A DNA stretch of 63,916 bases, counting the filler, from Octopus bimaculoides (taxonomy: Eukaryota): NCBI RefSeq assembly GCF_001194135.2. It is 6 parts of 5 records of this genome, joined end to end, with 100 filler letters (N's around TTAATTAATTAA, not from the genome) between each part and the next. Parts side by side here need not be neighbours in the genome. Positions count along the whole stretch, not along the records: positions 24,215 to 31,000 come from NC_068981.1; 5 more parts are not named here. The stretch is one strand, 5' to 3'. Below are positions 24,215-31,000 of this stretch, in pieces. The notes beneath the pieces are model-generated. The model was not told the origin of the DNA, did not search any database, and worked only from the letters and a program-made list of their open reading frames with translations. Position 1 is the stretch's first letter, and every line of letters begins with the position of its first letter. Both the position numbers and the translations under genes were made by a program.

Positions 24215-24818
24215 ATCATTACAAATTTGGGATTTTACCAATAGGACCACAACTTCAATTTCTGGACAACCTTATTTACGGGAGTACACATAGAAAATTA
24301 TATCCAAAATACTAATCTAATAATATAATCATTTTTAAGCCTACTATAACATACTATAAGAATAAAGTACATTAGAATTAATTATAAATTATTTAAGCAT
24401 ATTTTTTAAAAATATATATACCTTACCTGTTATTTGTCCGTGGGGACAGAAGATAATATTAATCAACGCTACACGTGTTTCAGCGCTGGTGGTTTGTTTT
24501 ACCAGGCTATACCTAATACATAAATCCACCAGTGCATCCTCAGGCTATTTTCCTCTTTTTATTATTATTATTAACGGAACCAACTTAATCCTACAAATTC
24601 TAAGATATCTTCATTAAAAATAAGATTAAAAATAAATAAAACTTCGTAATATATTTTCACAAAATTTAAAAGATTTAAATAGTTAGAAAATTGTAAGGTT
24701 TGGAACGGATTAATTATATTTTAGTTAATTTCAATGGGGGAAAATGATTTGAAAAACGAGTAAACCATAAGATGACTCGTTCATGGAACGAATTAAACTC
24801 ACACTGCGAGGTATTCTA

Positions 24819-25075
24819 TTAGGTTGTCCAGAAAGTTCTGAGCGTTTTTAAGCTAAGTCTTTTAACGCTTCATTAAGCACACCTGAACCGTAACACAGTT
24901 GAAACTTTGTTGTTTCTTGAAGTGGTAATGGTGCATCTCTTCTTTGTTCCTGACTAAAAATAGATTTATCTTTCATTCCGGTTAACCTTTATTGACATTT
25001 GAAATGGATAACCCAAAATTTCATATTCGGGTTAAAAAAAGGAGAAAATGCTGCAAAGACTTGCAAAAATATTGC
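24819..25075 (+). mobile_element. Mariner 5' fragment
   Basis: TA + TIR ttaggttgtccagaaagttctgagcgttttt. ATG at 25004 gives MDNPKFHIR, then deleted/frameshifted KKGENAAKTCKNI. Confidence 0.75.
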
Positions 25076-25229
25076 CCCTTGATCGCCAGAAGCTTTAAGC
25101 TTATATAAAAATACCATTATTATTATTATTTACAGGATTGTAAAAACGGCGCCGAATAAAAAATCATTCGCAGGGAAAGCATATATATATATATGACCAT
25201 CCCCAAGTACAATATGACCATCCCCAAGT

Positions 25230-25269
<40 letters not shown>

Positions 25270-25400
25270 TTACGCGTGTATATGTACATATTTATGATGC
25301 TGGGTATGTGTAACTTTTTATCTATATTTCGCTCAAACTTTTGGCGTTTCTGTATATATATCAATGGACATCGGCTTTACTAAAATTTTACAATGTATTT

Positions 25401-25745
25401 AAAAATCCACATAATTCCGGGTTCAGTCCCACTGCGTCGCAAATTGGGCAAGTGTCTTCCACTATAGCCTCGGGTCGACCAAAGCCTTGTGAGTGGATTT
25501 GGTCGGCGGAAACTAAAAGAAACCTGTCGTATATGTATATGCATATATTTATGTATTTCTGTTTGTCCCCCACCATCGCTTGGTAACCTATGTTGGCGTG
25601 TTTACGCCCCCGTAACTTAGTGGTTCGGTAAAAGAGACAGACAGAATAAGTACCAGGCTTACAAAGAATAAGTCTCTGAGTCGATTTCTTCGTCTAAGAG
25701 GCGGTGCTACAGCACGGCCGCAATCAAATGACTGAAACAAATAAA
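25401..25745 (+). mobile_element. SINE family A copy immediately downstream of the 740-aa gene, in opposite orientation
   Basis: Colinear with the copy at 7131-7530 from ttccgggttcagtcccactgcg to caatcaaatgactgaaacaaataaaaaa. Confidence 0.85.
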
Positions 25746-25818
25746 AAATAGAAGAATAATAGTAAAATCATATTTATTTTTCCATTGATTAATTAAAAAA
25801 AGATCTTCGTTATTTATT

Positions 25819-28041
25819 TCATTCTTGAAACACATTAATTTTTTCGATAATTTTATCTAAAAGCGAACTGTCGAGATGAATGTTAGTATTGATTATTGAC
25901 AATAATTGAGGTATGGTAGACGTCATCAATATCAAGGTAATCCTTGTGAATGCTGATAAGGCCAAGTCATTTCGATTTATTACATTGTTGCAAGCAAAGA
26001 AAAAAGATACGATTAGAAACAGTTTTATAATGGATTTACCAATCTCGTATCTCAATGGAAAATGATGGTTAACAATTGTCTTGAACAAATTGGCATTTAT
26101 GAATTCCTCTCCATATTTTGACTGAACTAAATTCGGGCGAATAGTTTTGGTTAAATTTCTAGATTGAATAAGTATAGAGTCATATTGTTTCTGAATAGCT
26201 TTTATAACTGCAGTACCATAGACAAAAAACATGACAGCAAACCATACGCCACCAATAGTACCAGGCTTAGTAAGAACTGCAATACCTACTGAAAACACAT
26301 AGTTGCAAAGGGCTTGAAAACTTGTAAGAAATATATAGATTGAATAAAGTCCCCATAACAGATAAAACGGCAACGATAGAAAAGTTAGAATTACAGAAAT
26401 AATCTTGAAAATATAGTTAGAATTCAAATACAGAGGGAAAATATAAACTCTGAAATAACTTGCTGGTAAAGTTAATATCAAATAGACAGTTGGGATTCCG
26501 TAATAAAGGAGGCACAGAAATAATTCACAGACAGAAAACACAACAAAAAGAATTGTAATGGCAACGAAAAACCAAAGCAATATGAATTGGCAGAAAATAT
26601 TTTTCTTGTTGTAATAAAACCAATTTTGCTTTATACGATTAATCCAAGTATAAATTATTAAATGCCAGAAATTTGGGTTTAACGCAGTAGAAATATTAGC
26701 TTTCATTATTGCATAGAGTAAATCATAATCCCGTTGTGTAGAAACATTTAAATTGCCATACTTCTCTAATAATCTCTTATTTTGAATGAGAAATGTGCAA
26801 GTGGATCTTTGATGTAATGTATTATAAGCGATAGTCTCACTTAAACGACTGGGAAGAACGAGGAGGATAAAGTTGAAAGATACGTAACTGATTAAGCTCA
26901 CAAATGGACCCCCGAAGAAGCCATCTGAATTCTCATAACTTCGCGAGATTCCTAATATTAGGGCGCGATAGCCCAATGGTATACCATCTTGGAATAGTAT
27001 TTTTATTGTTTCATATAAAAAGAAGTAATGCATCAAAAGATCCATGAAAATTACTGAAAGAGAGAATAGAATACAAAAGAATCTTCTCAGCCTTGAGGCT
27101 AAGAGAGTGGAATGGTGAAAGCAAAACAACCAAGACAGAAAATGAGAGAATGTGTAAATATTATTGCTTTCATTGATCCACTCGGATTCGTGTGGCAATG
27201 TGTTTTTAGTTGTTAGTAAGAAGTCTTCTTGAGCAAACAGTCGCAGATTGAGTTGACGGGAATATGAAGGTAATTTAGCTTTTGATACAAAAATAATAAT
27301 TAATGGTAATATAGCCCACAAAACGGCTCCGACGATGTTCTCAAAATTGACAAACATAGCATTTTCAATGATGTTTCCCGAACAAATAGATTTGGGATGA
27401 TAAACATAACTTCCATTTTTATAGACCTCACAGCAATAGTTCTTCAGTATCTCTCGGTTTATACCAATTCTTCTGTAAGCTTCAAGTGCTCTAGGGTTGT
27501 TCTTCTTCATATCACTTGACAAATTTATATAAAAACACATGTATCCAGATTTTCCTGTATACAATTTGTCGATAAATAAGATTTTTTTCACTTCCTCGAA
27601 AATCAAATATATTAAATCATGTCTCTGAATATTTTGTTTTCTACAGTGTATATTTATATCAATTCTTGGATTAGCAATGTAGACGTCTAATAAATTAAAA
27701 GAGTGAATTGAAAAATCATAGAAAAACTTTTTATAAGCAATTAAACCATCTGGTTCATCCGGAATCCAAGTAAAATGTCTCGCATTTGCAAAATAATCCA
27801 ATGGTATAGGGTTTAGTAGGCTATCAATTTTTTTATCAGATAAATGAACTTCAAAATTAAAAACCTTTTTTTCTAATTTTACTAAACGAAATAAAATCTC
27901 ACTGACATTGGGAGAAATTTTAATTTCGCAATTATTTCCGAGTTCCTTCGCATTGATGTTTAGTGATGTCAGTATGATAATAAGAATGATTGAAATAATA
28001 AGAGAACTGGTTGCTGTTAGTGTCGTCTGTACGGCAGCCAT
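25819..28041 (-). CDS. Uncharacterised multi-pass membrane protein, 740 aa, single coding exon: signal peptide, Cys-containing ectodomain, ~9-11 TM segments
   Basis: Uninterrupted 2223-nt ORF in stop-rich AT DNA. Hydrophobic N-terminus (LIISIILIIILTSL) ending NINA|KE. Residues ~32-232 have six Cys (38, 133, 169, 203, 204, 220) and sequons N45, N173, N209. Hydrophobic stretches near 233-253, 321-343, 375-397, 482-540, 543-590, 596-613, 669-688 and 694-717 (judged by eye). In-frame TAA 9 nt upstream of the ATG; AATAAA directly after the TGA. Confidence 0.92.
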   Translation of the reverse strand: MAAVQTTLTATSSLIISIILIIILTSLNINAKELGNNCEIKISPNVSEILFRLVKLEKKVFNFEVHLSDKKIDSLLNPIPLDYFANARHFTWIPDEPDGLIAYKKFFYDFSIHSFNLLDVYIANPRIDINIHCRKQNIQRHDLIYLIFEEVKKILFIDKLYTGKSGYMCFYINLSSDMKKNNPRALEAYRRIGINREILKNYCCEVYKNGSYVYHPKSICSGNIIENAMFVNFENIVGAVLWAILPLIIIFVSKAKLPSYSRQLNLRLFAQEDFLLTTKNTLPHESEWINESNNIYTFSHFLSWLFCFHHSTLLASRLRRFFCILFSLSVIFMDLLMHYFFLYETIKILFQDGIPLGYRALILGISRSYENSDGFFGGPFVSLISYVSFNFILLVLPSRLSETIAYNTLHQRSTCTFLIQNKRLLEKYGNLNVSTQRDYDLLYAIMKANISTALNPNFWHLIIYTWINRIKQNWFYYNKKNIFCQFILLWFFVAITILFVVFSVCELFLCLLYYGIPTVYLILTLPASYFRVYIFPLYLNSNYIFKIISVILTFLSLPFYLLWGLYSIYIFLTSFQALCNYVFSVGIAVLTKPGTIGGVWFAVMFFVYGTAVIKAIQKQYDSILIQSRNLTKTIRPNLVQSKYGEEFINANLFKTIVNHHFPLRYEIGKSIIKLFLIVSFFFACNNVINRNDLALSAFTRITLILMTSTIPQLLSIINTNIHLDSSLLDKIIEKINVFQE

Positions 28042-28051
28042 ATTTCGTTAT

Positions 28052-28075
28052 CTGTAAATAGAAAAGATTGAACAC
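28052..28075 (-). other. 3' splice acceptor 10 nt upstream of the ATG, implying an upstream non-coding exon
   Basis: Minus strand reads gtgttcaatcttttctatttacag|ataacgaaatATG; AG at 28053-28052. Confidence 0.7.
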
Positions 28076-28249
28076 GTCAAATAATGAAGAATGATTTATT
28101 TTCTTTATTTTGTAAGTTTTTGAAATGGAGAATATTTATTTAAAGCAGAATGTAAATTAATTAATATACATAAATATTTTGCTCGATATATCCCAGGAAA
28201 TCTTGTTTTGCTGTTTCCATTTTTCTATTGATTTTTGTTGTTAAATAGG

Positions 28250-28460
28250 TTCTGGGAAATTTTTAATTGCAAGAAATTCCGGGAAATATTCATTATAAAC
28301 TGAATGTAAATCTATTTTATTGTTTATTTACTAATAAAAAGAAATATTGTGGCCAGCGAGGCCGAGGAAATTTTGCATTTTGCTGTTGCGAACTATTTTT
28401 GTTGTAACATTTTCTAATTTAAAGTTTAGTGAATTCTTGGGAATTTTGTGATTGCAAGAA
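28250..28460. promoter_or_regulatory. Cluster of STAT/GAS-type palindromes upstream of the 740-aa CDS
   Basis: TTCTGGGAA 28250-28258, TTCCGGGAA 28277-28285, TTCTTGGGAA (N4 spacing) 28434-28443, plus TTGCAAGAA at 28267 and 28452. Function not demonstrated. Confidence 0.4.
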
Positions 28461-29221
28461 ATTTGCGGATTTACACTCGCACATACAAGCACATGGACTA
28501 ACACACACACGCGCACACATACATGCACCAACACGCACGCACACACATGCACACACGAAAACACACTCACGCACACACACAAACATACAAGCACACACAC
28601 ACTCGTACACACACACACGCACATACATACAAACACTAACATACACACACCCACAAGCACTCACACCCACACACACTCATACACATACATACAAACACTC
28701 ACACATACACACACATGCACAAACACATAGATTGTCACTTGTAAACTTCATTATTTTAGAGTCAAGATTATTTGCCAACATGGCAGTCCTGGTTTCTTCA
28801 TTATTTCAGTGAGGCATTGAAAACTGGTCTTCTTTTACGCAAGAAAAAGTAAGGAATATGCTCCAAAATTTGAATTTTGAATTTTGTTTTACCAAATTAC
28901 GTTTCTCAACAGCTCAAAGTATTTTTTCAGCTTTAAAATTATTGCCTTTGTGTTCACGTGCTTTTCATTAAATCGAATATTATTCTTTCTTTCTTTCTTT
29001 CTTTCTTTCTTTATTCCTTTTTTTTTTTTTGCACATTACAAATGAAACTACACATTTGTCTTCGGCTACAGAATCTAATGAGACGTTCACGAGACTAAGC
29101 CTTTCGTGGATGCGAAACCATTGGTCACTCTATGACCGGACATAGATTTAACTACATATAAATACATTACTGCCCTACGCTTTAGAGTGTGTTTCTTTTT
29201 CGGATATATGATACATTGGCG

Positions 29222-29226
<5 letters not shown>

Positions 29227-29293
<67 letters not shown>
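29227..29293. repeat. (TAA)n microsatellite, 5' flank and target of the Dong insertion
   Basis: Direct reading; abuts the Dong 5' truncation point. Confidence 0.95.
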
Positions 29294-29295
<2 letters not shown>

Positions 29296-29329
29296 TATGG
29301 AATAACAATCGAAAAAAGATGGTATAGGC

Positions 29330-30487
29330 CAGAGATGGGAAACCTGCGGCCTTCTGCAGCTCTTGATGTAAATGTTAATATATATTTTTTAAGACCTTGA
29401 TTTTTTTTTGTCTATAGTTTTTATGCATAAATTTACAACACACACGCACACACACACACACACACACATAGATGAGAGGGAAAATAATTGTGTTCAGTGA
29501 TGTCACTCCCAGAAATTGGAACCATTTTTCTAATGAATATAAACTTAAAGCGACATGGCTATAAAGACAACATTTCCTTGTCAGTCACACCATCCTAGTG
29601 GAGTGAGTGATCTCACGCGTGATACAAGTAAAGTTCCTGTTTCGTATTCCTCCTCGCTGTGGTCTGTGCTAAGTACTACTCAATGTCTTCACGCGTGATA
29701 CAAGTAGAGTTTCTGTCTCGTATTCCTCCTCGCTGTGGTCTGTGCTAAGTACTACTCAGTTAACTGTAGTCGTGACTAAGTTCATAGTGACTTGGGAGGT
29801 TGTAAGTCTGAGTTAGTTACAGCCTCATTTGAAAGCGTACATTCATCAGTGCATGTGTTGTTTTGCAGACTTCGTTTTTTATCACTGAGACTTAATTAGT
29901 AACAATGATCGAATTCATCGCTACTCTGTTAGGCCTACTGCACACTGTTCCAGATAAAACGGTTTTAGATAAGACACAATCAATCAGCGTCCGAAACCAT
30001 GTTCTTGGAATCTTGGTCATGACTTTACCATTGTCATTGATTTGATTGAAAACCATCAATATTTTACATTATTTCTATATTAATTGGGTAATGATAAATA
30101 ATAGTACTAATTACAGAAAAGAATATTACGAATCTAGATGACAATTATTTTCAAATGGTAGTGGCAATTGCCGAATTCAAGACCAAGAATATGGTTTTGG
30201 ATGCAGGTTTATCGTATCTTGTCTGAGATCGTTTTTTCTGGGTCAGTGTGCAGCCGGCCTTACTAATTCATTTACTTAAAAAAAAGTTCCTACTTAAGTA
30301 AAATATTTGAAAATGTCATATTTACAATTTCTATTCACCTGTCTTTTTTTATGACATTGCTATTAAGTTATTTAGTGGCCTAAGCCTAAGGATGAAATGA
30401 CAAAAATAATATTTGTTCAATGCAGCCTCTATGAAGGGCGGTGAATTGTAAGGTGGCCTTCATGAACAAAAAGGCTCCCCACCCCTT
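29330..30487. mobile_element. Non-autonomous hAT (Charlie-like) DNA transposon with 8-bp TSD
   Basis: Imperfect TIRs cagagatgggaaacct / aggctccccacccctt. TSD gtataggc (29322-29329) / gtatagga (30488-30495). Removing the element restores the Dong reading frame. Confidence 0.7.
29613..29758. repeat. 76-bp tandem duplication, each unit starting with the palindrome TCACGCGTGA
   Basis: Units start at 29613 and 29689 and are nearly identical (…cgtattcctcctcgctgtggtctgtgctaagtactactca). Confidence 0.9.
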
Positions 30488-30967
30488 GTATAGGAACACA
30501 CCAGAAAAGGTCACAGAAAATGAAAAAGCATGCCAATACACACCGATAGAGAAATTAAGGCCAGATATAGTTGTCAGAGATCATGAAGAAAAAATGCTTT
30601 CTATTTGATGTATCAATACCAACAAACGGCAACGTTTCTCTAAAAGAAATGGAGAAACTTTCAAAATACAAAGACCTGGAAATAGAGGTAACTCGAATGT
30701 GGAATCTAAAAACAGAAACAATTCCTATCATAGTAGGTGCCTTAGGTATAATAAATAAATATTCAGACAAATACATAACAAAAACACCAGGACTTACAAA
30801 TATATATAACATACAGAAAATTGCACTACTGGGCACGGCACACATCCTACGCAAAACACTTTCAATACAGTAAACATAAGAGCATTACAGCAAACCACAG
30901 CACATACCCAAGGCACACAGAGCTGCGCTCGGTAGTGAAGTGAAAGCACGATATAAAAATAAGACTT

Positions 30968-31000
<33 letters not shown>

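What the first reader, a model, noticed from the sequence alone, without database searches (positions are those of the whole stretch)
25819..28041. Orphan receptor/channel-like membrane protein: secretory signal, disulfide ectodomain, ~10 TM segments, one coding exon
Seen: an intact 740-codon ORF in otherwise decayed DNA. It has a cleavable-looking signal peptide and a ~200-aa ectodomain with an even number of Cys (6, including a CC pair) and three N-glycosylation sequons. A first TM helix is followed by long loops and a dense C-terminal hydrophobic bundle ending …IVNHHFPLRYEIGKSIIKLFLIVSFFF…ITLILMTSTIPQLL. It lacks GPCR (DRY, NPxxY, GPS), Cys-loop, DEG/ENaC, TRP and MFS hallmarks that I can recognise. 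Known: lineage-expanded sensory and immune receptor families, including octopus chemotactile receptors, often have intronless coding regions. Inference: a member of an unnamed ligand-binding receptor or ligand-gated channel family. I have an unverified recollection of similar unannotated proteins in corals and bivalves, which would make the family ancient and overlooked.
Basis: partly seen in the sequence, partly recalled or inferred. Interest (0 to 1): 0.85.

Follow-up and report, generated by a model that had tools for sequence, protein, structure and literature searches.

The report
Orphan spiralian multi-pass membrane glycoprotein gene
This is an intact octopus gene, kept by selection, for a membrane protein with a disulfide-bonded outer domain and about nine membrane helices; its unnamed family also occurs in bivalves, a brachiopod and an annelid, and it matches no characterised protein family or solved structure.

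Summary
Window 25819-28041 (-) is an uninterrupted 740-codon ORF (chance about 4e-26). It has an N-terminal signal-like segment and a ~200-aa ectodomain with six Cys (one CC pair) and three N-glycosylation sequons, followed by a hydrophobic helical region.

It is a real gene. dN/dS is 0.27 against a 91%-identical O. sinensis protein. The coding region is one exon in every octopod copy checked.

Relatives are many: at least 9 loci in O. sinensis and at least 6 in O. bimaculoides. A profile search found 131 clusters, and every named one is 'uncharacterised': bivalves, Lingula and Owenia. No coral was seen.

With 44 diverse sequences AlphaFold2 gives a confident model (pLDDT 81, pTM 0.77). Foldseek finds nothing in the PDB or among viral models (best E about 1, TM about 0.1). 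Profile searches of PDB sequences also find nothing, and no Pfam hit is on record.

Two O. bimaculoides paralogues carry an automatic UniRef name, 'Receptor for retinol uptake STRA6'. I tested that and it fails: hhalign probability 0.4%, and real STRA6 scores below shuffled controls.

Charge bias and sequon density favour N-out, 9 TM, C-in rather than 10 TM. 'Orphan family' is supported. 'Receptor or ligand-gated channel' remains untested inference.

The parts
25819..28041 (-). Complete coding sequence, 740 codons plus TGA, in a single exon
   Evidence: ORF. (chance about 4e-26). (91% identical to O. sinensis LOC115211026). (dN/dS 0.27).
27949..28041 (-). Residues 1-31: signal-peptide-like N-terminus. 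The hydrophobic core is about 11-24 and a possible cleavage site is INA|KE.
   Evidence: Hydropathy peak at 6-24. An N-terminal hydrophobic segment is conserved across the family. The model is low-confidence after it, at 25-36. Cleavage is inferred; no SignalP was run.
27349..27948 (-). Residues 32-231: extracellular or luminal alpha/beta domain. It has six family-conserved Cys (38, 133, 169, 203, 204, 220) and three sequons (N45, N173, N209).
   Evidence: each Cys conserved in at least 82% of 38 non-octopod sequences. (strands and helices mostly at pLDDT 80-90). (sequon density 2.35 per 100 aa against 0.4-0.8 in the loops).
25888..27348 (-). Residues 232-718: membrane domain, probably 9 TM helices. 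Approximate positions are 232-253, 313-341, 379-396, 483-515, 517-539, 543-591, 597-634, 663-690 and 697-717. Two conserved cytosolic modules lie at about 397-482 and 617-664.
   Evidence: hydropathy, conserved family-wide. (AlphaFold2 helices, pLDDT mostly 80-95). (net positive charge of loops 397-482 and 617-664 and of the C-tail). Conserved polar residues are R317, R320, R469, E506, Y608, Y620 and R664.
25819..25887 (-). Residues 719-740 plus the stop codon: short cytosolic C-terminal helix
   Evidence: helix 725-739. (family C-tail net charge +2.7).
28052..28075 (-). Pyrimidine-rich tract ending in TTACAG, 10 nt upstream of the ATG. It is a probable 3' splice acceptor of a 5'-UTR intron.
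   Evidence: Read. TTACAGA is invariant in four octopod loci whose upstream flanks otherwise diverge. Similar acceptor-like sites occur in L005 and L004. No transcript evidence.
25813..25818 (-). AATAAA immediately after the stop codon, with a second copy at 25773-25778. These are candidate polyadenylation signals.
   Evidence: Read. Conserved in the O. sinensis locus. Function inferred.

Best explanation
What it is:
- This is a functional protein-coding gene with a single coding exon.
- The product is most likely a glycosylated multi-pass membrane protein. A signal peptide directs a ~200-residue alpha/beta domain, probably held by three disulfides, to the outside or the lumen.
- About nine helices then cross the membrane. 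Two conserved loops and the short C-terminus face the cytosol.
- It belongs to an unnamed multi-copy protein family of lophotrochozoans: cephalopods, bivalves, a brachiopod and an annelid. The family has no detectable sequence or fold relationship to any characterised family.

Shown versus inferred:
- Shown: the intact ORF, purifying selection, family extent, conserved cysteines and helices, a confident fold model, and no match to known families.
- Inferred: the topology, and the mechanism below.

How it most likely works (my estimate about 0.3):
- The outer domain binds an extracellular or luminal ligand or partner.
- The helix bundle provides a path for a small solute or ion. It carries a near-invariant glutamate (E506) inside helix 482-515, and conserved arginines at the cytosolic ends of helices.
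- That makes it a transporter- or channel-like protein with its own binding domain, not a G-protein-type receptor.
For: Gene and selection:
- ORF and its improbability.
- dN/dS 0.27 with dS 0.15 against the O. sinensis gene, and 0.16-0.63 in all pairs of six octopod genes.

Family extent:
- 19 octopod proteins.
- 131 clusters at 50% identity with E<=1e-3, of which 109 have E<=1e-10. Most are 750-860 aa and align nearly full-length.
- Named members come from Mytilus, Ostrea, Mercenaria, Mya, Ruditapes, Potamilus, Sinanodonta, Mizuhopecten, Lingula and Owenia. All are 'uncharacterised'.

Conserved features:
- Family-wide conservation of six ectodomain Cys, of the hydrophobic segments, and of P246, G378-P379, P397, F458-W459, R469, E506, P517, P593, Y608, Y620, P662, R664 and P711.

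Fold:
- AlphaFold2 pLDDT rose from 36 with 11 octopod sequences to 80.9, pTM 0.77, with 44 diverse sequences. That is expected if the fold is real and conserved.

Topology:
- Sequons are enriched in the ectodomain. Loops 397-482 and 617-664 and the C-tail carry net positive charge.

No known relative:
- PDB sequence searches, Foldseek against the PDB and against BFVD, and NCBIfam and PHROGs all found nothing.
- No Pfam hit is on record for any member looked up.
Against: - No expression data were available for this gene or species.
- No SignalP or DeepTMHMM was run. An uncleaved N-terminal anchor (10 TM, N-in) is not excluded.
- Model coordinates could not be inspected, so no cavity, pore or oligomer interface was seen.
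- Foldseek with a whole 740-residue model can miss distant helical-bundle similarity, and no AlphaFold DB search was possible.
- The ectodomain is not faster-evolving than the rest, so a diversified ligand repertoire is not indicated.
- The protein could equally sit in an internal membrane.
- No internal repeat typical of many transporters was detected.
Confidence: 0.55

Rival explanations
1. It is a divergent STRA6-type receptor for retinol uptake, or a relative that serves another lipocalin. A carrier protein would dock outside and the lipid would pass into the membrane through a lateral opening.
For: UniRef names two O. bimaculoides paralogues (P0004, P0008) 'Receptor for retinol uptake STRA6'. 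The inferred N-out, 9-TM, C-in topology matches the nine-helix topology reported for STRA6 (PMC12953553, read).
Against: - The family profile finds no STRA6 chain in the PDB even at E<=10.
- hhalign of the 44-sequence family profile against zebrafish 5SY1_A plus human STRA6 gives probability 0.4% over 19 columns.
- Real STRA6 sequences score below shuffled copies of themselves.
- Foldseek of a confident model does not list 5SY1 among 50 matches up to E=10.
- No Pfam hit of any kind is on record for any member looked up.
- The tail after the last helix is about 22 residues. STRA6 has a long C-terminal region that binds calmodulin.
- STRA6 has no 200-residue N-terminal Cys-rich domain.
- Caveat: the STRA6 profile had only two sequences.
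Confidence: 0.04
2. It is a cell-surface sensory or immune receptor, or a ligand-gated ion channel, of a lineage-expanded family. This is the reader's proposal: subunits assemble around a pore and the ectodomain gates it.
For: - Secretory signal, glycosylated disulfide ectodomain and a multi-helix membrane part.
- Many paralogues in loose clusters: P0001 and P0002 lie 300 kb apart on one O. sinensis chromosome, and P0003 and P0006 lie 90 kb apart in O. bimaculoides.
- Intron-poor genes.
- Large expansions in bivalves.
Against: - No similarity to any known channel or receptor fold. The TRP and Nav chains in the Foldseek list have E above 2 and TM about 0.1.
- The ectodomain has the same or lower dN/dS than the membrane part, unlike typical chemoreceptor or immune-receptor binding domains.
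- No oligomer model and no expression data.
Confidence: 0.2
3. It is a protein of internal membranes (ER, Golgi or lysosome). It would be an enzyme or transporter whose Cys-rich domain faces the lumen, for example in lipid or glycan handling.
For: The same architecture (signal peptide, luminal domain, nine or more helices) is common among internal-membrane proteins; this rests on my own knowledge. The membrane part and cytosolic loops are strongly conserved, with many invariant Pro, Gly, Tyr and Arg residues. The ectodomain shows no accelerated evolution.
Against: Housekeeping organelle proteins are usually single-copy and widespread. This family is multi-copy and was seen only in lophotrochozoans. 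No known catalytic motif or family match was found.
Confidence: 0.18
4. It is not a host gene in use. It would be a pseudogene, or an ORF carried by a transposon or an integrated virus.
For: It is embedded in repeat-rich DNA: a SINE-like element 60 nt downstream, microsatellites upstream, and what looks like a retroelement fragment at 30571-30873.
Against: - The 740-codon frame is intact, with dN/dS 0.27.
- No terminal inverted or long direct repeats flank it.
- No match in PHROGs or BFVD.
- The protein has no polymerase, integrase or transposase part.
- Relatives sit at ordinary chromosomal loci in four phylum-level lineages.
Confidence: 0.02

Closest known systems
Uncharacterised protein LOC115211026 of Octopus sinensis and its octopod paralogues (LOC118765918, LOC106877664, LOC106875165 and others)
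   Same: 91% identical over all 740 residues, with the same length and the same single-exon structure. The upstream flank and a downstream SINE-like insertion are shared. This is the orthologue or a very recent duplicate.
   Different: dS is 0.15, so it is not the same sequence. This window's exact protein is not in the searched collection. None of these proteins has a known function, and none of the six LOC identifiers searched (which include these) appears in the searchable literature.
Uncharacterised proteins of 750-860 aa in bivalves (Mytilus, Ostrea, Mercenaria, Mya, Mizuhopecten, unionids), Lingula anatina and Owenia fusiformis
   Same: Alignment is nearly full-length (E 1e-20 to 1e-34). 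The six ectodomain Cys, the helix positions and the motifs GGP, NPxFW, E506, YYGxP and HxPxR are shared. The coding region is one exon in Mercenaria and Lingula.
   Different: Identity is only 15-23%. These proteins are somewhat longer. Owenia has one intron in the ectodomain part and two tandem copies.
STRA6, receptor for retinol uptake (PDB 5SY1; Pfam PF14752)
   Same: The inferred nine-helix, N-out, C-in topology. An automatic UniRef name on two paralogues.
   Different: No sequence, profile or fold similarity. This protein has no long calmodulin-binding tail, and STRA6 has no Cys-rich N-terminal domain.
Other proteins with 'signal or first helix, then a large Cys-rich glycosylated outer domain, then nine helices', such as the TM9SF nonaspanins and the SLC44 choline-transporter-like proteins (named from my own knowledge as look-alikes)
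   Same: The overall layout of an outer domain followed by about nine helices.
   Different: No Pfam hit of any kind is on record for any member looked up, so EMP70 and Choline_transpo are absent too. Nothing appeared in PDB sequence or fold searches. I did not compare with these families directly.

Membership tests
STRA6 / RBP receptor family (Pfam PF14752) | Match to the family's sequence model | tested here: not met
   No Pfam hit, not even a faint one, is on record for P0001, P0003, P0004, P0037 or P0033. All hits show '-' apart from the gelsolin domains of P0019.
STRA6 / RBP receptor family (Pfam PF14752) | Detectable sequence or profile similarity to STRA6 itself | tested here: not met
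   Family profile against PDB sequences found no STRA6 at E<=10. hhalign against 5SY1_A plus human STRA6 gave probability 0.4%. Real STRA6 scores below 400 shuffled controls. The human sequence was recalled from memory and then checked against 5SY1_A (E 2.6e-169).
STRA6 / RBP receptor family (Pfam PF14752) | Same fold as the solved structure 5SY1 | tested here: not met
   Foldseek of the pLDDT-81 model against the PDB gave best E=1.2 and TM about 0.1. 5SY1 is not among the 50 listed matches.
STRA6 / RBP receptor family (Pfam PF14752) | Long cytosolic C-terminal helices that hold calmodulin | tested here: not met
   Only about 22 residues follow the last membrane helix. The calmodulin feature of STRA6 is taken from PMC12953553.
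STRA6 / RBP receptor family (Pfam PF14752) | Nine transmembrane helices, N-terminus outside, C-terminus inside | tested here: inconclusive
   Charge bias and sequon density fit this topology. Hydropathy alone gives 9-10 segments. No topology predictor or experiment was available.
Unnamed lophotrochozoan family (octopod LOC115211026-like; bivalve, Lingula and Owenia 'uncharacterised' proteins) | Full-length alignment with the six conserved ectodomain Cys and the conserved membrane motifs (GGP, NPxFW, E506, YYGxP, HxPxR) | tested here: met
   The window protein carries every invariant residue of the 44-sequence alignment (C38, C169, C203, P397, P517, Y620, P711).
   No PDB sequence hit. TRPV, TRPM and Nav chains appear only at E above 2 with TM 0.06-0.11.
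Transposon- or virus-derived ORF | Flanking terminal repeats, or a match to mobile-element or viral proteins | tested here: not met
   Only microsatellite repeats flank the ORF. No convincing PHROGs match: none for the window protein, and only one weak hit (E 0.038) for a Mercenaria relative. BFVD best E is 3.1.

The most novel reading that the evidence does not exclude
The family is a previously unrecognised membrane-protein fold, with its own extracellular binding domain, that arose in or before the lophotrochozoan ancestor. It would act as a new class of ligand-coupled transporter or channel, expanded independently in octopods and bivalves.
Probability: 0.3. Interest if true: 0.7.

Novelty: categorically new. 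Interest (0 to 1): 0.5.

Why it matters
If the lack of any match holds up against AlphaFold DB and HHpred, this is a conserved, multi-copy membrane protein family of molluscs, brachiopods and annelids that nobody has named or studied. It is at least as old as the split of those phyla, and it has a confidently predicted fold unlike any solved structure. Families like this are where new transport or sensing mechanisms tend to be found. The intron-less coding region makes cloning and expression from genomic DNA easy. The work also corrects a misleading automatic 'STRA6' label in public databases. The gene itself is an ordinary member of the family, and nothing yet ties it to a physiological role.

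Tried and rejected
- STRA6 homology, suggested by the UniRef names: rejected by profile, profile-profile, shuffle-control and fold tests.
- AlphaFold2 with only 11 octopod sequences: useless (pLDDT 36). It was repeated with 44 diverse sequences.
- Second and third word-indexed homologue searches with alignments: they returned only close relatives of the dominant or first sequences and added no named distant taxa. Taxonomy came from cluster look-ups instead.
- Internal repeat or inverted-repeat symmetry in the membrane domain: hhalign of sub-alignments gave probability below 1%.
- Faster evolution of the ectodomain: not seen.
- Transposon structure: none. Viral or bacterial family matches: none convincing; the only hits above threshold were weak, E 0.038 in PHROGs and E 0.17 in NCBIfam, both in relatives rather than the window protein.
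- Rfam families in the piece: none.
- Literature search for the gene identifiers and for STRA6 in octopus or molluscs: nothing relevant.
- Coral relatives: none among the 30 clusters whose sources could be read. About 100 clusters remain unidentified.
Full report
**1. The observation**

The piece 24215-31000 contains one long reading frame, 25819..28041 on the minus strand. It runs ATG to TGA and encodes 740 residues. With the local base composition (about 32% G+C) a random frame stays open for 740 codons with probability about 4e-26.

- The N-terminus has a hydrophobic core at about residues 11-24, followed by SLNINA|KE.
- Before the first membrane helix there are six Cys (38, 133, 169, 203, 204, 220; one CC pair) and three sequons (N45, N173, N209).
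- Hydrophobic segments then lie at 235-253, 313-342, 378-396, 486-504, 507-525, 544-562, 570-590, 595-613, 667-688 and 697-718.

The DNA around the gene is repeats.
- A SINE-like element lies just downstream (25407-25762). It has three further copies in 22 kb of O. sinensis DNA.
- A degenerate (AC)n/(TG)n tract lies at 28465-28750.
- Other simple repeats are scattered through the piece.
- A short ORF at 30571-30873 looks like the tail of a retroelement protein. That rests on my own recognition and was not tested.

**2. It is a real gene**

The closest protein is 'uncharacterized protein LOC115211026 isoform X1' of Octopus sinensis. It is 91% identical over all 740 residues.
- That gene is one uninterrupted 2223-nt stretch.
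- Codon comparison gives dS 0.151, dN 0.040 and dN/dS 0.27. By region the ratio is 0.37, 0.29 and 0.16 for residues 1-232, 233-480 and 481-740.
- The two loci also share about 470 nt upstream, about 660 nt downstream and the SINE-like insertion. They are therefore orthologues or very recent duplicates.

Among six octopod genes all pairwise dN/dS values lie between 0.16 and 0.63. The ectodomain is not faster than the membrane part.

No inverted or long direct repeats flank the ORF.

A TTACAG site about 10 nt before the ATG is invariant in four octopod loci whose flanks otherwise differ. An AATAAA follows the stop codon directly. The likely gene structure is a non-coding 5' exon plus one coding exon. 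No transcript data were available to confirm this.

**3. The family**

The first search found 19 proteins, all octopod: O. sinensis, O. bimaculoides, O. vulgaris and Argonauta hians. That is at least 9 loci in O. sinensis and at least 6 in O. bimaculoides.

Several loci sit on one chromosome. P0001 and P0002 lie 300 kb apart. P0003 and P0006 lie 90 kb apart. A diverged partial copy lies 9 kb from the O. sinensis orthologue.

A profile of 11 octopod sequences, searched against 1.84 billion representative proteins, gave 131 clusters at E<=1e-3, of which 109 have E<=1e-10. Most are 750-860 residues and align almost end to end.

I could read the sources of 30 clusters. Every named one is 'uncharacterised' or 'hypothetical'.
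- Bivalves: Mytilus (four species), Ostrea, Mercenaria, Mya, Ruditapes, Potamilus, Sinanodonta and Mizuhopecten.
- Brachiopod: Lingula anatina.
- Annelid: Owenia fusiformis.

Most unnamed clusters are closest to bivalve members. Some are only 21-26% identical to any named member and may come from other groups. No cnidarian was seen.

The coding region is also a single exon in the closest non-octopod-like relative P0020, in Mercenaria and in Lingula. Owenia has two tandem copies, each with one intron at about residue 187-189.

**4. Conserved anatomy**

Across 38 non-octopod sequences each of the six ectodomain Cys is conserved in 82-100%. Also conserved are W92, S114, L118, P246, R317, R320, G378-P379, P397, F458-W459, R469, E506, P517, P593, Y608, Y620, P662, R664 and P711. 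The hydrophobic segments are conserved in position.

Topology evidence comes from two measures.
- Sequon density is 2.35 per 100 residues in the ectodomain, against 0.4-0.8 in the loops.
- Loops 397-482 (net +5.7) and 617-664 (net +3.1) and the C-tail (+2.7) are positively charged.

With the ectodomain outside, these charges require an even number of crossings between 528 and 617. AlphaFold2 draws 543-591 as one long helix. I therefore favour nine crossings, N-terminus out and C-terminus in, rather than ten. This is inference.

No internal sequence repeat was found in the membrane domain.

**5. Fold**

With 11 octopod sequences AlphaFold2 failed (pLDDT 36). With 44 diverse sequences it gave pLDDT 80.9 and pTM 0.77. 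Only the signal region, the linker at 25-36 and the loop at 258-285 are poor.

The ectodomain is a mixed alpha/beta domain. The remainder is helical, with a small beta hairpin at 639-649.

Foldseek against 350,542 PDB chains gave no match with E<=0.001. The best was E=1.2 with TM about 0.1. Foldseek against viral models gave a best E of 3.1.

Sequence and profile searches of all PDB chains found nothing meaningful. NCBIfam and PHROGs gave no match for the window protein and only weak hits (E 0.17, E 0.038) for two relatives. No Pfam family is on record for any member looked up.

**6. The STRA6 lead**

Two O. bimaculoides paralogues carry the UniRef name 'Receptor for retinol uptake STRA6'. This was the only link to a characterised family, so I tested it.

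I wrote human STRA6 from memory and checked it against the PDB. It matches zebrafish STRA6 (5SY1_A) at E 2.6e-169, and that alignment also gave me the deposited zebrafish sequence.
- hhalign of the family alignment against the two STRA6 sequences gave probability 0.4% over 19 columns.
- The family HMM scores real STRA6 below shuffled copies of it. A STRA6 HMM finds no family member better than E=0.011 among 120.
- Foldseek does not list 5SY1.

STRA6 also differs in anatomy. It has a long calmodulin-binding tail (PMC12953553) and lacks a Cys-rich N-terminal domain. The only resemblance is the nine-helix, N-out, C-in topology. I regard the name as an annotation artefact. The one caveat is that my STRA6 profile had only two sequences.

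**7. What it most likely does**

Shown: this is a selectively maintained gene for a protein with a conserved disulfide-rich outer domain, a conserved helical membrane domain and two conserved cytosolic modules. It has no enzymatic or signalling domain that any library recognises.

Inferred: the outer domain binds something outside the cell or in a lumen. The helix bundle forms a path for a small solute or ion. It carries a near-invariant glutamate (E506) within helix 482-515, and arginines at the cytosolic helix ends.

I put this transporter- or channel-like reading at about 0.3. An internal-membrane enzyme or transporter I put at about 0.18. STRA6-like I put at about 0.04, and a pseudogene or mobile-element ORF at about 0.02.

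The even constraint across domains argues against a fast-diversifying binding module. The many paralogues and the lineage restriction argue against a housekeeping organelle protein.

**8. Novelty and verdict**

The gene is an ordinary member of a family that public databases already hold as 'uncharacterised'. The family itself has no name, no literature, no Pfam model on record and no structural relative that I could find.

I rate the family as far from every known kind. This rests on negative searches that did not include AlphaFold DB or HHpred.

Interest is moderate at 0.5. It is a clean, testable orphan family with a confident model, but it has no evidence of function or expression yet.

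Noticed in passing
window 25407-25762: A SINE-like repeat begins about 60 nt after the stop codon. It matches three other places in 22 kb of O. sinensis DNA at 74-81% identity, and the orthologous O. sinensis locus has it at the same position.
   Followed up: partly
window 30571-30873 (+), overlapping ORF 30555-30854 (-): A 100-codon ORF ends ...IPIIVGALGIINKYSDKYITKTPGLTNIYNIQKIALLGTAHILRKTLSIQ. From memory this resembles the C-terminal tail of retroelement (LINE-type) proteins common in invertebrate genomes. It is probably a decayed fragment.
   Followed up: no
window 29963-30156: A block of about 190 nt, roughly 2 kb upstream of the ATG, is conserved at about 82% and lies in the same relative position in the O. 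sinensis locus. It could be the non-coding first exon or promoter, or just another shared repeat. Part of it matches a second place in L001.
   Followed up: partly
window 29613-29758: A 76-nt unit is present as two tandem copies that are 95% identical. Its meaning is unknown.
   Followed up: no
window 28465-28750, 29226-29297 and 28983-29028: Upstream of the gene lie a long degenerate (AC)n/(TG)n tract, an (ATA)24 run and a (TTCT)n run. They create the spurious Cys/Val-rich and His/Thr-rich ORFs listed.
   Followed up: yes
L001 21070-22002 (O. sinensis, 9 kb downstream of the orthologue): A second, diverged partial copy of the family (residues 342-670, 49% identity) lies in tandem. It may be a pseudogene or a poorly aligned paralogue.
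   Followed up: partly
L002 1-7460 and protein P0019: In O. bimaculoides the paralogue P0004 lies next to a gelsolin gene. The O. vulgaris protein P0019, named 'cytoplasmic-like' with gelsolin Pfam domains plus family similarity, looks like a gene model that fuses the two neighbours.
   Followed up: partly
L007 5001-18733 (Owenia fusiformis): The annotated Owenia protein P0045 appears to be stitched from two tandem copies: exon 1 of the first copy and exon 2 matching both. Each copy has two coding exons.
   Followed up: partly
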